DNA of 63,505 nt, counting the filler, from Hausera hauseri (taxonomy: Eukaryota), in assembly GCA_046269625.1 (NCBI GenBank). It is 12 parts of 12 records of this genome, joined end to end, with 100 filler letters (N's around TTAATTAATTAA, not from the genome) between each part and the next. Parts side by side here need not be neighbours in the genome. Positions count along the whole stretch, not along the records: positions 4,594 to 8,537 come from JBJURY010867850.1; 11 more parts are not named here. One strand, given 5' to 3'. The stretch's first letter is position 1. The number at the start of each line of letters is the position of its first letter. Below the pieces are notes generated by a model that did not search any database, was not told the origin of the DNA, and saw nothing but the letters and a program-made list of their open reading frames with translations. Shown piece by piece: positions 4,594-8,537 of the stretch. Made by a program: the position numbers and the translations under genes.

Positions 4594-6910
4594 ACTGAAT
4601 CTATATGCCGTTGGAAAGTTTGTGCTGCGTTCTTTAAACCGAACGGCTTGAATGCGTATTCGAAAAGACCGAAAGGTGTTATAATGGCCGTTTTTGGTAT
4701 ATCTTCTGGTGCTACCGGTATTTGGTGGTAGGCTTTTTCGGGATCTATGGTTAAATAAATCGTAGTATTGTGTAAAGAATGCAATATATTCTTTATCAAC
4801 GGTAAAGGATAAGCATCCATGGTTGTGACATTATTAAGTTGCCGATAGTCGCCACATTGACGGAATGTGCCATCTTTCTTTGGGACGACGTGCAGTGGGG
4901 ATGCCCATGGTGATTTCGAGCGCCTTATGATTCTGGCTTGCTCGAGTGCAGAGAATTCCGCTTGTACTGCCTGTCGATGGCGTGGTAAAAGTGGACGGAG
5001 TTTCTGCCTAACGGGCCTAAGGTGACAATATAATGGAACGTCGCGTTAGCCGGTCGGAATGCTGAGTCTTTTTTTATTGTGTGAAAGCAGGACTTGGCTA
5101 AGTATTGCTGCATTTCCTGACTAAGTGTAGTGAAGGATGTTGTTGTCGCGACAGTGGTCTGATTGGACTTAATATGTGAAATTCTAGAGATTGCATCGCC
5201 TAAATCATCCTTGTGAACGCTTTTTGAAGGTTCTTTTAGTATAGGTTTTATAAGTGAAATAGATTGCATGACTTGTTGGTTATTTGAAGAGGTGAATTTT
5301 GTTGGACTGCTCTTGACGATCTGACGTTGTCTACAATCTACAAGGAGGTTATAGAAAGATAGAAAGTCAGATCCAAGTATTGGCAATTGTGTGTCGGCAA
5401 CGATGAATGTCCAATTGAAAGTGTCGGGGAATGATGGTAGTGAATAAGACTTTGGACGTGCCGAAAATGCGTAAAGCTTGGCCGTTTGCTGTATACAGTT
5501 TGATGTTAGACAGTGAGATAGATAGTGTTTTGATGGATGGTGGTAATAAGGAAACGGCAGCCCCTGAGTCTATGAGGAAGATTGGCTGATTAGGTTTGGA
5601 TGTCAAGGAGGCTTTTAATGTGAAGACAGCATTTGTGCGGCTGTAGCAATGTCGAGAGTAGCCTTTACCAGCATGCGCCAGAACATCTGGCGGCTTTATT
5701 AGATTTTTTTGGATAAAAGAATTTAGAGAGTCATAAGAATTACGATGGGATTAGTTAAATCGACTGGAAAACGTGCAACCGTCGATGCATTTTCGGCTTT
5801 GTTGTTGAATCTATTATGGTAAATGCAAACGATGTCAGGTTTTTGGAAAGCTGATGTATAAAATTTGCACCACAAGCAACATTTGTTGGATTGGTTTTTG
5901 AATTTACTGTGGTAATAGCACACCATATGTCGAGTAGGGGATCTAGTGGAATTTTGTGATAAAGCACGGCTGTGATTAGGTGTGAATCGATTGCGTCGCG
6001 GTATTGTTAAATTGTCCAGTTTGGAAGTTTGAGCAGAAATTGCTTGTTGTATTGCCGTGTTTTCAGCTCGGAGAGTGTTTATTTGATTATTCAGCGCTAA
6101 GATTTCAGCACTGGATGGTGTTATAGGCGGTTGCAATGTGGCTGCGACGATAGGAGTATGATGTGTATTTAGTATGTTGTAACTTTTATCAGCCAGTTGT
6201 GCTAACTTTTCTAACGTAGCAGTATCTTCAACTACTGTTAGTAAAGCGCGTATTTCTTTCGGTAATGATTGAAGGAAATATCTGTGCAATAAGTCGGCAA
6301 TGTTGGTTTGGTTTACTCCCAACTTACTCAATTAAGTCAAAGATGTTTGCAAAAATTCGGAGGGTTTTAGTGTGTCTATGGTGTTTTCATTAAAATATTT
6401 CTGGATAATGTTATCCAGAGAAGGCTCGGAGAGTTTAAGGATGGCGTAGAATAGTGTTTCGTATGGGTCTACGGTCTGAAAAATATCGGAAAGATTTGGG
6501 AGTAGCGACTTAAGGCTGGCTGGTAAAAGTATTAATAGGCTATTGGCTTTGAAGAAAGGGTCAGTGATCTTATTCGATTTTAGCCATTGTGCATGGAATT
6601 CTAGCCATGTACGACTGGAATATTGTTTATCTGTAAAATAGTCGACACAAGAAAAATTGACCAAATAGGATGCTGCAGGTAGAACTAAAGGGGACTGCTT
6701 TAGAGAAACGTGTATGATAGGAATATCGGTGAATTCCTGAGGTTCGTTTAATGCAGATTTTGTGTCGGAGCCACCAAATAGGCGTGAACATAAAGTTATT
6801 ATTAGTGGTGAAGGTGGGGATAAAAAGGATGACATTAAATCGGAATAATGAAGATGGTATCCGTTTATGTTTAGTGTGTAACATTTTAAGTTAATGCAAT
6901 GAGCCAAATC
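4594..6910 (-). mobile_element. CsRn1-clade-like Ty3/Gypsy, gag-PR-RT (copy A, degenerate)
   Basis: gag CYYHSKFKNQSNKCCLWC (CHCC), protease FLIDSGAAVS, RT DAYPLP..KAYHQIPVAPEDIPKTAIITPFGLFE. Confidence 0.9.
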
Positions 6911-7814
6911 TACAAAATCTGCTATTGTTGCTTTAATGTGTGTGCGGTGTGTGTGGATATGTTTATTTTGAAGGAAAAAAAATAGGGAAAAAGGTGAGTG
7001 CTATGTCAGGGATATAGTGCGCTACCGGGGACACAACCGTGCCCCAAATCCCTGCATTGTAATGGTTGATCTTTCTGACCGGTGAGATCATTGATTTGTA
7101 TTGCAATGGTTCATTGCTGGCTTTAAGATAATTCTGGAGAAATTGCGGACTATTGTCAAAATACGAGGCAACCAACTCTTCGGGTAAAATTGTATATTTT
7201 AATAATTTAGTAGGTTCATTATTATATGCATAATGAAAATATGACAAATTCACTGACTTTTTTTCCTATCTTTTTTAGGTCTTTTGGGACTCCAGTGATA
7301 GACCCCGATAATAGTTGACGTAGTAATACATGGTAATTGATGAGTAAGTTGGGGAAATTATGTCACCATAAGAGTATTGTACTGGCGGCGCTTTTGTATC
7401 CTATTTGAATAAGTTTTTGTAGGTGGAGATTATTGAGATTTGGATGTAGAAATGAGAATAGATCCCGGAGTAATTGAATGTATAGTCCATGTGTGTGTTG
7501 CATTGCTGTACGATGGAGCATTTTAGAAATGAACGATTGATTAGAAATGAGTTTTAGCCATGAGAATATGAATGATGCGGCACAATTTGGTCTGGTGACA
7601 TGGAAAGTATGTGAAAATGCAGTCAGAACATGAAATTGGGATTCGACTATTTGTTCTTCAATAATAAATTGATGTAGTTCATTGAGGACTATCATAAGGG
7701 TTCGCTGCAATGATATTGGGTGAAACCAATCCCGCCGTACCTCAGGTTCGAGCAGTAATATACCGGAAATAATCACCAATGACTTATTTAATAAACGCAA
7801 CCTTCCTGTCACTT

Positions 7815-8537
7815 CATTCTTATTCAGTTTACAGGGTCTAAAATGTCGACTTAGATTATTAAACTGTTGGCACTTGTTGGCTCGACAGTTTGCGTCTCGG
7901 CAATGATATGAATGTTCGAAGAGAATGGTAAAAAGAGACTGGTAAATTTCGGAAATGTTTAAAGTCAAAATATTTGTGGAATCTTTACCGCCAACTTTTT
8001 GAAGTTCATGCGTATGGCCCTGAGATTTAGCACATGATCCACACAGTTCGAATTCTTTACGAATTCTTCGTGAGCAAGTGTACCGTACATCATCGAGTAA
8101 CATATCACATGAATACATGAATATATAACATCAAGGCATAATTCTAGATGCAATTCGTAACACATTACGAGTGTCGCAAATTTTACCCGACGAATTGTGG
8201 AGAATTTCAAATGCCTTTTCAACTTTTCTTTAGTCATTGATTCCCTTCTTTTCTCAACATGAGTTAAATACTTCAAGACGTATTTACTTATTTCCTGAAA
8301 CATATTAACTTCATAACGTTCATCCTCAAGGCAATGTATTTGTTCTTCGTAAAAGTGCTTTATGAATGAAACTGTCGGTGTATCTTCTGACATCATAGAT
8401 GGCAGGTAACCATCAGATAACGATTCGTAATATAATCCGAGCGAAACCCCAGCTATGGTAAAAAAATCACGCCGATCATTGAGTGTACCATATGTATCAT
8501 TGTGGGTTAAATATTTATCATCAATAACAGGATAATT
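7815..8537 (-). pseudogene. CBP/p300-like HAT C-terminus-ZZ-TAZ2 fragment carrying an in-frame Sin3 HID-like insert
   Basis: NDRRDFFTIA / KRHLKFSTIRRVKFATLVMCYELH (HAT end); YSC..RYTC..EFELCGSC..GHTHEL (ZZ); LFEHSYHCRDANCRANKCQQF..HFRPC (TAZ2); 8-bp duplication at 8108-8123 shifts the frame. Confidence 0.8.

What the first reader, a model, noticed from the sequence alone, without database searches (positions are those of the whole stretch)
7815..8537. CBP/p300 acetyltransferase fragment with an in-frame Sin3 HDAC-interaction segment (coactivator-corepressor chimera)
Seen: one stop-free minus-strand frame from the contig edge reads ..NDRRDFFTIA-[GVSLGLYYESLSDGYLPSMMSEDTPTVSFIKHFYEEQIHCLEDERYEVNMFQEISKYVLKYLTHVEKRRESMTKEK]-LKRHLKFSTIRRVKFATLVMCYELH..YSC, followed by ZZ and TAZ2. 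Knowledge (recalled): in CBP/p300 DGRDAFLTLA and RDKHLEFSSLRR are contiguous, and the bracketed ~76 aa (about 8223-8450) aligns with the Sin3 HID ([42 protein letters not shown]). Inference: an in-frame, intronless insertion of a deacetylase-recruiting module into an acetyltransferase. It could be a lineage-specific chromatin regulator or a retro-recombined mosaic. I know of no described protein with this architecture.
Basis: partly seen in the sequence, partly recalled or inferred. Interest (0 to 1): 0.85.

Follow-up and report, generated by a model that had tools for sequence, protein, structure and literature searches.

The report
Retrotransposon-carried mosaic of host gene fragments
The reported CBP/p300-Sin3 "chimera" is real sequence, but it is one stretch of a broken, intronless patchwork of pieces from three host regulator genes (CBP/p300, Sin3, CNOT1) lying against the long terminal repeat of a flatworm-type retrotransposon, a known by-product of reverse transcription and not a working coactivator-corepressor protein.

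Summary
A 76-codon Sin3 piece (8450-8223, minus strand) scores above Pfam's cut-off for Sin3_corepress. The 36 codons after it hit only p300/CBP.

- The CBP homology changes frame at an 8-bp tandem duplication (8122-8107). The ZZ finger keeps 5 of 8 zinc ligands, and TAZ2 is cut off in its second zinc site.
- TAZ2 is fused in frame to 167 codons of CNOT1 (7821-7321; tblastn E 6e-32), interrupted by a stop at 7363.
- The mosaic ends at a purine tract. Then come a moderately repeated ~480-nt stretch, a tRNA-Trp-type primer-binding-site match, and gag (CHCC signature), protease and RT of a CsRn1-clade Ty3/gypsy element, all on the same strand.

Contigs of one public run hold several diverged copies of the mosaic, three of which bridge the 8450 junction.

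Best reading: host mRNA pieces joined by reverse-transcriptase template switching and carried in an LTR retroelement, as in LTR-mediated retroposition (Tan et al. 2016). This copy is decaying. It is a new member of a known kind.

One loose end is that all three junctions are in frame and stops are fewer than expected, so the ORF may once have been kept open.

The parts
8451..8537 (-). 29 codons, probably the C-terminal tail of the CBP/p300 HAT region (..PIVD..DGRDAFLTLA equivalent). The frame is cut off by the edge of the piece.
   Evidence: Translation. No PDB hit. A recall-based alignment was reached by 34 of 5000 shuffles.
8223..8450 (-). 76-codon fragment of the Sin3 HDAC-interaction region (partial Sin3_corepress), in frame on both sides.
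   Evidence: Pfam PF08295, E 5.9e-8, 33.1 bits > 25, profile positions 37-97 of 98. SIN3B 8bpa E 1.7e-4 and yeast Sin3 E 0.02.
8115..8222 (-). CBP/p300 HAT C-terminal end (KHLEFSSLRR..VYTC equivalent).
   Evidence: p300/CBP chains take 22 of the 24 listed rows, including the top 21, E 0.016.
8107..8122 (-). 8-bp tandem duplication (ATTCATGT twice) that shifts the CBP homology by +2 into another frame.
   Evidence: Sequence. 'YSC' is read once in each frame.
7990..8121 (-). ZZ zinc-finger remnant of CBP/p300 that keeps 5 of 8 zinc ligands.
   Evidence: Alignment to p300 8hag_K 626-669; 1tot and 6ds6 ZZ chains at E 0.13-0.15.
7822..7923 (-). N-terminal part of TAZ2: first HCCC site intact, second site cut after His and one Cys.
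   Evidence: zf-TAZ 21.4 bits, below the cut-off of 25, profile positions 7-42 of 72. p300 TAZ2 chains E 0.04.
7321..7821 (-). 167-codon fragment of the CNOT1 C-terminal Not1 domain, fused in frame to TAZ2.
   Evidence: Pfam Not1 E 7.3e-15, profile positions 2-101 of 372. Human CNOT1 5fu6 E 1.3e-26. tblastn E 6e-32. It groups with flatworm CNOT1 on a very long branch.
7363..7365 (-). In-frame TGA inside the CNOT1 homology.
   Evidence: Homology continues past it to 7321.
7257..7293 (-). Purine-rich tract (core AGGAAAAAAAG, 7267-7257), read as the polypurine tract of an upstream element.
   Evidence: It is one of only two purine runs of 10 nt or more on this strand of the piece. It abuts the point where summed depth rises and where the exact-match contig ends, 30 nt further on.
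6779..7256 (-). Putative LTR (~480 nt) with no protein homology. It is moderately repeated and contains TATATAA and AATAAA.
   Evidence: Summed depth 138-1200, against 22-70 in the mosaic. No Pfam or PDB hit. Sequence. This is an inference: no second LTR copy is in the piece.
6765..6776 (-). tRNA-Trp-type primer-binding-site match, TGGTGGCTCCGA.
   Evidence: Two mismatches to the CsRn1-clade PBS quoted in PMC2582038. It is the only match in the window, on the right strand, between the putative LTR and gag.
5723..6760 (-). gag of a CsRn1-clade Ty3/gypsy element. It carries the CHCC signature at 5920-5867 and an in-frame stop at 6334-6332 that other copies lack.
   Evidence: CX2HX9CX3C was found once, against 2 of 500 shuffles. 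The motif definition is in PMC2582038. At 6334, A>G is read in 11 contigs.
5370..5606 (-). Aspartic protease remnant (..LIDSGAAVSLLP..).
   Evidence: ORF translation. Weak gag-asp_proteas match, E 0.14.
4594..4820 (-). Reverse transcriptase, cut off by the edge of the piece.
   Evidence: Pfam RVT_1, E 3.9e-9, 36.9 bits > 29.6.

Best explanation
The CBP-Sin3 'chimera' is one stretch of a chimeric retrocopy. Partial, intronless pieces of at least three host mRNAs were joined head to tail on one strand, most likely by repeated template switching of a retrotransposon reverse transcriptase. The pieces are the CBP/p300 HAT tail, ZZ and half of TAZ2; 76 codons of the Sin3 HDAC-interaction region; and 167 codons of the CNOT1 Not1 domain.

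The mosaic sits at the 3' internal end of an LTR element. It runs into a polypurine-like tract and a ~480-nt putative LTR. That LTR is followed by a tRNA-Trp-type primer-binding-site match and by the gag-protease-RT of a CsRn1-clade Ty3/gypsy element. Two elements therefore appear to share one LTR.

The unit has been copied a few times in the genome, which is probably a flatworm's. This copy is decaying: it has an 8-bp duplication frameshift, a stop in CNOT1, and lost zinc ligands.

Shown: the homologies, the frame breaks, the same-strand order next to retroelement genes, and the existence of several diverged copies.

Inferred: the RNA-level origin, the LTR/PPT assignment, and that the element itself carried the mosaic.

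The locus is not expected to make an acetyltransferase or to recruit HDAC.
For: Homologies.
- Sin3_corepress is above Pfam's cut-off, and SIN3B hits in PDB.
- p300/CBP matches are collinear across three pieces: 8hag_K 597-630, then 626-736.
- CNOT1 matches at E 1.3e-26 in PDB and 6e-32 by tblastn.

Breaks.
- The 8-bp tandem duplication.
- The TGA at 7363.
- 3 of 8 ZZ ligands lost.
- 4 of 21 CNOT1 columns that are at least 90% conserved have changed.
- The terminal branch is 1.6, against a median of 0.37.

Retroelement context.
- RVT_1 match.
- CHCC signature CX2HX9CX3C, as defined for the CsRn1 clade in PMC2582038.
- PBS match.
- The 11-nt purine run lies exactly at the repeat boundary.

Copies.
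- The mosaic has summed depth 22-70 with 2-4 variant contigs, against 5.8 for the exact contig.
- Three variant contigs bridge 8450.
- Deletion variants exist.

Precedent. In LTR-mediated retroposition, partial retrocopies replace internal retrotransposon sequence. Retrocopies from two to four genes are joined at one locus, and the loci are re-copied as non-autonomous elements (PMC5131818).
Against: - No second LTR copy, target-site duplication or upstream element sequence is visible, because the piece ends at 8537. The LTR and PPT assignment therefore rests on depth, position and short motifs.
- The PBS match alone is not significant window-wide (0.38 expected).
- The parent genes of this genome were not available, so absence of introns and microsimilarity at the junctions could not be tested.
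- Simple serial template switching does not readily predict that the Sin3 piece sits between CBP residues that are adjacent in p300, with no visible loss.
- The depths come from contigs of a single run and are not copy numbers.
Confidence: 0.6

Rival explanations
1. Two unrelated events. A processed-pseudogene mosaic already existed, made by another reverse transcriptase or by capture of cDNA pieces at a repaired DNA break. A CsRn1-clade element later inserted next to it with its own 5' LTR. The purine tract and the shared orientation are coincidences, and the few mosaic copies come from segmental duplication.
For: - Only one side of the mosaic is visible, and no retroelement sequence lies 5' of it within the piece.
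- The precise, loss-free position of the Sin3 piece inside CBP fits an insertion event better than serial switching.
- The mosaic's depth (22-70) is far below that of the element.
Against: - An 11-nt pure purine run sits exactly at the repeat boundary, where a PPT belongs.
- The mosaic shares the element's strand.
- A variant copy keeps the mosaic joined to the same A-rich stretch and the sequence below 7264.
- The CNOT1 piece shares the element's C>G strand bias.
Confidence: 0.2
2. The mosaic is, or until recently was, a translated open reading frame kept open by selection. It could be a C-terminal extension of the element's polyprotein or the ORF of a non-autonomous derivative. Its role could be to tether integration, to blunt host silencing, or simply to avoid nonsense-mediated decay of the element's RNA. 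On this reading the present copy is a recently broken member.
For: - All three inter-gene junctions are in frame (chance 1 in 27).
- There is one stop in 403 homology-frame codons, where 4.5-5.8 are expected if amino-acid divergence from the parents is about 20% (P 0.01-0.07).
- The ORF ends only ~70 nt before the purine tract.
- The frame is still open at the edge of the piece.
Against: - The domains are fragments that cannot fold as such: half a TAZ2, a ZZ missing three ligands, 61 of 98 Sin3_corepress positions, and 100 of 372 Not1 positions.
- The 15 visible differences among copies split 6 synonymous to 9 non-synonymous, close to neutral.
- No laid contig is reported to lack the 8-bp duplication.
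- The stop deficit vanishes if divergence is 8%.
- No relatives were found in the protein databases.
Confidence: 0.08
3. The Sin3 piece entered CBP at the RNA-processing level before any reverse transcription. A Sin3-derived exon would have been spliced or trans-spliced between two CBP exons, and the chimeric mRNA was then retro-copied. This concerns only the CBP/Sin3 junctions and is compatible with the best explanation for the rest.
For: - The insertion is precise, in frame and 228 nt long (a multiple of three), between residues that are adjacent in p300.
- The CNOT1 fragment points to a flatworm host.
- Spliced-leader trans-splicing occurs in parasitic flatworms (PMC12582326 abstract).
Against: - No exon structure of the parent genes is available.
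- The junctions show no remnant splice signals, and none would be expected.
- Retroviral-type reverse transcriptases are also known, from my own knowledge, to insert foreign RNA segments by a double switch.
Confidence: 0.12
4. One reading: a functional lineage-specific protein at this locus that combines acetyltransferase activity with HDAC recruitment.
For: The Sin3 piece is genuine and in frame. The frame is open at the edge of the piece, so a HAT core could lie upstream.
Against: - There is a frameshift and a stop.
- Zinc ligands are lost.
- TAZ2 is truncated and fused to a CNOT1 fragment.
- The locus sits in a retroelement context.
- Several decayed copies exist.
Confidence: 0.02
5. An assembly chimera joined unrelated reads.
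For: The piece is short, and bridging of the 8222 junction could not be read from the output.
Against: - Three variant contigs of a public run carry differences at both 8439 and 8454, with at least 51 letters to their nearest end, so they bridge 8450.
- Every depth bin is covered.
- An exact contig spans 7228-7430.
- Diverged paralogues that share a junction cannot come from a mis-join.
Confidence: 0.02

Closest known systems
LTR-mediated retroposition and chimeric retrocopies in animals (Tan et al. 2016, Genome Res, PMC5131818)
   Same: - The retrocopies are partial, truncated at both ends, and lie in the orientation of LTR-retrotransposon sequence.
- Several parent genes are joined at one locus. 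The paper's examples are the fly CG4799_CG11924_r and a mouse 'Super' retrocopy of four genes.
- There is no poly(A) tail at the fragment ends.
- The locus is re-copied as a non-autonomous element.
- Retrocopies are often in frame.
   Different: - Here the host is probably a flatworm and the carrier is a CsRn1-clade element.
- One fragment (Sin3) lies inside another (CBP) with no visible loss.
- The copy is old and decayed.
- Only the 3' flank is visible, and microsimilarity at the junctions could not be tested.
Retroviral and plant LTR-retrotransposon transduction of host genes (acutely transforming retroviruses; maize Bs1).
   Same: Host mRNA-derived, intronless sequence lies between element sequence and the PPT/3' LTR, in sense orientation. 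Several host genes can be represented in one element.
   Different: No evidence here of an expressed fusion protein or of any phenotype. The fragments are sub-domain pieces.
CsRn1-clade Ty3/gypsy retrotransposons (CsRn1, PwRn1, AgCR; PMC2582038)
   Same: Gag has the CHCC signature CX2HX9CX3C. The PBS is of the tRNA-Trp type. The gene order is gag-PR-RT. The clade is known from trematodes.
   Different: Described members carry no host-gene passenger. This copy has a stop and several frameshifts. The LTR pair and the 4-bp target duplication are not visible.
Complex LTR-retrotransposon insertions in which two elements share one LTR (PMC1950507, abstract only)
   Same: The order PPT - LTR - PBS, with internal sequence on both sides of a single LTR.
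   Different: Those cases were described in Triticeae. Here the upstream internal region is host-derived, and the arrangement is inferred from one LTR only.
CBP/p300, Sin3 and CNOT1 proper
   Same: Clear sequence homology of the respective pieces.
   Different: None of the three proteins is present as a foldable domain set (see the membership test).

Membership tests
CBP/p300 (KAT3) acetyltransferase | HAT_KAT11 catalytic core | tested here: inconclusive
   No HAT_KAT11 match in the visible 190 codons; only about 65 residues of the post-core tail are present. The frame is cut off by the edge of the piece at 8537, so upstream content is unknown.
CBP/p300 (KAT3) acetyltransferase | ZZ finger with eight zinc ligands | tested here: not met
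   In the ungapped alignment to p300 626-669, 5 of 8 ligands are kept. The positions of the 2nd, 3rd and 4th Cys read L, R and R. Which residues are ligands comes from general knowledge of ZZ domains.
CBP/p300 (KAT3) acetyltransferase | Complete TAZ2 with three HCCC zinc sites | tested here: not met
   zf-TAZ scores 21.4 bits, below the cut-off of 25, over profile positions 7-42 of 72. Homology stops after the His and first Cys of site 2, where CNOT1 begins.
Sin3 co-repressor | Sin3_corepress (HID core) domain | tested here: inconclusive
   The match is above the gathering score (33.1 > 25) but covers only profile positions 37-97 of 98. The first third of the domain is absent.
Sin3 co-repressor | PAH domains and the remainder of the HID (Sin3a_C) | tested here: not met
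   No PAH or Sin3a_C match in any piece. CBP sequence flanks the piece on both sides.
CNOT1 | Complete Not1 C-terminal domain (372 profile positions) | tested here: not met
   Only profile positions 2-101 match. tblastn homology ends at 7321. There is a stop at 7363.
LTR-mediated chimeric retrocopy | Partial copies of host mRNAs, truncated at both ends, from more than one parent gene | tested here: met
   Sub-domain pieces of CBP/p300, Sin3 and CNOT1 lie in one strand and order.
LTR-mediated chimeric retrocopy | Flanked by LTR-retrotransposon sequence in the same orientation | tested here: inconclusive
   Met on the 3' side: purine tract, putative LTR, PBS match, gag-PR-RT. The 5' side lies beyond the edge of the piece.
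LTR-mediated chimeric retrocopy | Absence of the parent genes' introns | not testable with these tools
   Homology is uninterrupted over 167 (CNOT1) and about 140 (CBP) codons.
LTR-mediated chimeric retrocopy | Microsimilarity between donor RNAs at the switch points | not testable with these tools
   This needs the parent mRNA sequences.
CsRn1-clade Ty3/gypsy retrotransposon | Gag CHCC signature CX2HX9CX3C | tested here: met
   CYYHSKFKNQSNKCCLWC at 5920-5867; 2 of 500 shuffles give any such motif. Definition in PMC2582038.
CsRn1-clade Ty3/gypsy retrotransposon | PBS complementary to tRNA-Trp (TGGTGA[G/C]CCCG[T/A]) | tested here: inconclusive
   TGGTGGCTCCGA at 6776-6765 has two mismatches. 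It is the only match in the window and is correctly placed, but 0.38 matches are expected by chance window-wide.
CsRn1-clade Ty3/gypsy retrotransposon | Paired LTRs with TGT..A(A/T/C)A ends and a 4-bp target-site duplication | not testable with these tools
   Only one candidate LTR lies in the piece, and its exact ends are uncertain.

The most novel reading that the evidence does not exclude
The patchwork is not a passive passenger. It was kept as an open reading frame of the retroelement, as a C-terminal extension of its polyprotein or the ORF of a non-autonomous derivative. On this reading, remnants of host chromatin and RNA-decay modules served the element: an H3-tail-binding ZZ, a Sin3 HDAC-contact piece and the CNOT1 Not1 domain. 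They could have tethered integration, acted as decoys against host silencing, or simply kept the RNA out of nonsense-mediated decay. The copy seen here would be a recently broken member.
Probability: 0.07. Interest if true: 0.7.

Novelty: new member of a known kind. Interest (0 to 1): 0.3.

Why it matters
The apparent coactivator-corepressor fusion would have been a striking new protein architecture, but it is a retro-mosaic pseudogene, so it should not be annotated or pursued as a chromatin regulator. As a positive result it is a clear multi-gene example of LTR-retrotransposon-mediated capture of host mRNA pieces, with at least four junctions. The genome is probably a flatworm's and the carrier is a CsRn1-clade element, a combination that my three literature searches did not turn up. 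The in-frame junctions and the shortage of stop codons give a small, testable hint that such passengers may be kept open for a time.

Tried and rejected
- **Protein searches for mosaic relatives.** The 255-aa ZZ-TAZ2-CNOT1 piece, the 141-aa CBP-Sin3-CBP piece and the gag C-half gave nothing by word-indexed search. The exhaustive phmmer search found only CNOT1 proteins matching residues ~105-253, and none matching both parts.
- **ESM Atlas.** No meaningful neighbour; best score 0.81.
- **Metagenome scan.** A scan for the 8450 junction 24-mer gave 0 hits.
- **Rfam.** No RNA family in the piece.
- **Repeat search.** No LTR pair or meaningful repeats within the piece.
- **CNOT1 extent.** I first thought the CNOT1 homology ran on to about 6990. 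phmmer and tblastn reject this; it ends at 7321.
- **LTR.** I first thought the element lacked a 5' LTR. I replaced that idea with the PPT-LTR-PBS reading.
- **Selection test among copies.** Only 15 differences were visible, 6 synonymous and 9 non-synonymous, which is inconclusive.
- I did not search a joined CBP model with the insert removed, or any read-through of the frameshift. All pieces were searched apart. The CNOT1 stretch was read through its stop with X, and only inside a script.
- **Complex prediction and structure prediction.** Not used, because the report claims no binding or fold.
Full report
**What is in the sequence.** All features lie on the minus strand of the piece 4594-8537.

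The 76-codon stretch 8450-8223 is a genuine Sin3 fragment.
- Pfam Sin3_corepress scores 33.1 bits (cut-off 25), E 5.9e-8, over profile positions 37-97 of 98.
- Human SIN3B (8bpa) matches at E 1.7e-4, and yeast Sin3 and fission-yeast Pst1 chains match more weakly.

The 36 codons after it (8222-8115) hit p300/CBP chains in 22 of the 24 listed rows, including the top 21, and align to KHLEFSSLRRAQWSTMCMLVELH..VYTC (E 0.016).

The 29 codons before it give no database hit. An alignment to the p300 stretch that I remember as preceding RDKHLEF was reached by 34 of 5000 shuffles. On present evidence the Sin3 piece does sit between residues that are adjacent in p300, in frame on both sides.

- At 8122-8107 the octamer ATTCATGT occurs twice in tandem. 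The CBP homology leaves the first frame there and continues in the frame of ORF 8130-7366, and 'YSC' is read once in each frame. The original frame runs on as non-homologous text to a stop at 7965.
- In the new frame the ZZ finger aligns without gaps to p300 626-669 but keeps only 5 of its 8 zinc ligands. TAZ2 keeps its first His-Cys3 site and stops after the His and first Cys of the second. Scores are p300 E 0.02 and zf-TAZ 21.4 bits, below its cut-off.
- At about 7821 TAZ2 is fused, again in frame, to the C-terminal Not1 domain of CNOT1. The evidence is Pfam Not1 E 7.3e-15 over positions 2-101 of 372, human CNOT1 chains at E 1.3e-26, and tblastn with nine CNOT1 proteins at up to E 6e-32 over 7821-7321. 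A TGA at 7363 interrupts this homology.

So the visible part is CBP | Sin3 | CBP | CNOT1. None of the pieces is a complete domain, and no HAT_KAT11 core is in view.

**How decayed it is, and whose genes these were.** The exhaustive search of 1.84 billion representatives found 187 proteins. In the 150 listed, the best-scoring stretch lies in the CNOT1 part in all but one; the exception (P0094) matches the ZZ region through nine repeated stretches. The highest identities are 38-49%, and 41-43% among hits that cover most of the fragment. No protein combines a CBP-like and a CNOT1-like match.

Named top hits are CNOT1 of a pipefish, a wasp, a fly, a monogenean and a trematode. Over the same region fish and fly CNOT1 are 65% identical, while the window fragment is 30-38% identical to everything.

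In a maximum-likelihood tree the fragment joins the flatworm CNOT1 group (support 92/95). Its terminal branch is 1.6, against a median of 0.37. The placement of so long a branch is unsure, but it agrees with the retroelement type described below.

Of the 21 alignment columns that are at least 90% conserved in 67 CNOT1 homologues, the fragment has changed 4, including the near-invariant His and Arg of the SHR motif.

**The surroundings.** Downstream on the same strand lie:
- a gag gene (about 6760-5723) with one in-frame stop at 6334-6332, which 11 contigs of other copies read as a sense codon;
- a protease remnant (LIDSGA);
- a reverse transcriptase (RVT_1, E 3.9e-9), reached through several frame changes.

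Gag carries CYYHSKFKNQSNKCCLWC at 5920-5867, that is CX2HX9CX3C (2 of 500 shuffles give any such motif). This 'CHCC' signature replaces the usual CCHC knuckle in the CsRn1 clade of Ty3/gypsy elements of trematodes and insects (PMC2582038).

The same paper gives the clade's tRNA-Trp primer-binding site as TGGTGA(G/C)CCCG(T/A). The only match in the window, with two mismatches, is TGGTGGCTCCGA at 6776-6765, on the right strand just upstream of gag. It is not significant on its own, but it is correctly placed.

Between the end of the CNOT1 homology (7321) and this site there is no protein homology.

Laying the contigs of the one public run that holds the sequence gave the following summed depths:

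| Region | Summed depth |
|---|---|
| gag-pol | 10^3 to 9x10^4 |
| 7233-6838 | 138-1200 |
| mosaic | 22-70 |
| exact-match contig 7228-7430 | 5.8 |

That contig ends 30 nt inside the point where the depth rises. This is what a k=31 graph does at a repeat boundary near 7257. (That Logan's contigs come from a k=31 graph is from my own knowledge, not from a tool output.)

Directly upstream of that boundary lies AGGAAAAAAAG (7267-7257), one of only two purine runs of 10 nt or more on this strand of the piece. I therefore read 7293-7257 as a polypurine tract and 7256-6779 as an LTR. The order is PPT-LTR-PBS. On this reading the mosaic is the 3' internal end of an upstream element that shares one LTR with the downstream gag-pol copy. 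Such shared-LTR arrangements are described for plant elements (PMC1950507, abstract). This step is inference: no second LTR and no target-site duplication lie within the piece.

**Copies and the chimera question.** In the mosaic, 2-4 contigs carry differences from the window. Three of them differ at both 8439 and 8454, with at least 51 letters to their nearest end, so they bridge the CBP/Sin3 junction at 8450.

Other variant copies also exist. One has two in-frame gaps (8295-8351 and 8417-8455). Another lacks 7265-7893 but keeps the A-rich stretch and the sequence below 7264.

Diverged paralogues that share junctions rule out a mis-assembly and show that the unit was copied after it was formed. 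Bridging of 8222 could not be read from the rows shown. The run provides contigs only, so these depths are not copy numbers, and the run may not be independent of the assembly.

No RNA run was listed.

**Mechanism.** The closest described process is LTR-mediated retroposition (Tan et al. 2016, PMC5131818). During reverse transcription of an LTR element the enzyme switches to co-packaged host mRNAs and back. The paper reports the following:
- The retrocopies are partial, truncated at both ends, and replace internal element sequence.
- They lack L1 hallmarks.
- They can combine two or more parent genes. The paper's examples are a fly two-gene case with three switch points and a mouse 'Super' retrocopy of four genes plus an Alu.
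- They are often in frame.
- They can be re-copied as non-autonomous elements.

The present locus fits every feature that could be tested here. On this model minus-strand synthesis passed the PPT region, switched into CNOT1 mRNA, then into CBP mRNA inside TAZ2, then made an excursion into Sin3 mRNA and returned to CBP. It must have rejoined element RNA somewhere beyond 8537.

The weak point is the loss-free return to CBP. There are three possible accounts: a double switch near the point of departure, capture of a Sin3 cDNA piece at a break in an existing CBP retrocopy, or a chimeric mRNA made by splicing or trans-splicing before retro-copying. I cannot separate these without the parent genes.

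**A loose end.** All three inter-gene junctions keep the reading frame (chance 1 in 27). The 403 homology-frame codons contain a single stop and one frameshift.

Suppose amino-acid divergence from the parents is about 20%. That is my estimate from 3 of 14 zinc ligands and 4 of 21 conserved CNOT1 columns being lost, and its confidence interval is wide. A neutral simulation then gives 4.5-5.8 stops, with one or none in 1-7% of runs. At 8% divergence there is no deficit.

The density of lesions in the mosaic, 2 in about 400 codons, is similar to that in the adjacent gag-pol copy, about 4 in about 720. This is as if both had been open until this copy was laid down.

Against selection on a protein, the 15 visible differences among copies are 6 synonymous and 9 non-synonymous. 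In addition, the domains are fragments. I score the kept-open reading at about 7-8%.

**Verdict.** It is a new example of a known process in a probable flatworm genome, carried by or abutting a CsRn1-clade element.

- I did not search a joined CBP model with the Sin3 piece removed, or a read-through of the frameshift. All pieces were searched apart.

Noticed in passing
window 5827-5774 (minus strand): A second, degenerate CHCC-like motif (CIYHNRFNNKAENASTVA) lies 13 codons after the intact one. The element's gag may originally have had two tandem CHCC knuckles.
   Followed up: partly
window 4594-7000: The retroelement has a strong strand asymmetry: on the coding strand C is 25-27% and G is 11-15%, a GC skew of about 0.3 on the plus strand. 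The CNOT1 fragment shares the bias (C 23.6%, G 14.1%), whereas the Sin3 and CBP pieces do not. CpG observed/expected is 0.67 in 6908-7289 and 0.86-1.31 in the other segments, so there is no general sign of CpG depletion.
   Followed up: partly
window 8295-8351 and 8417-8455: One contig of the public run (depth 31, higher than the exact-match contig) lacks both stretches. In each case they are replaced by the same three letters, TCG, and both changes keep the frame. The first removes the most conserved Sin3 motif (YEEQIHCLEDERYEVNMFQ) and the second spans the CBP/Sin3 junction.
   Followed up: no
window 7265-7893: Another contig joins 7894 (inside TAZ2) to 7264 through 27 letters that resemble 7291-7265. 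This is a copy lacking the rest of TAZ2 and the whole CNOT1 fragment while keeping the A-rich tract.
   Followed up: no
window 6966-7265 (minus strand): A 100-codon open frame crosses the putative LTR with no Pfam or PDB match. A 222-codon open frame (7000-6335) runs from the putative LTR through the PBS match into gag. These are probably chance open frames in an A/C-rich strand, but the true gag start was not located.
   Followed up: partly
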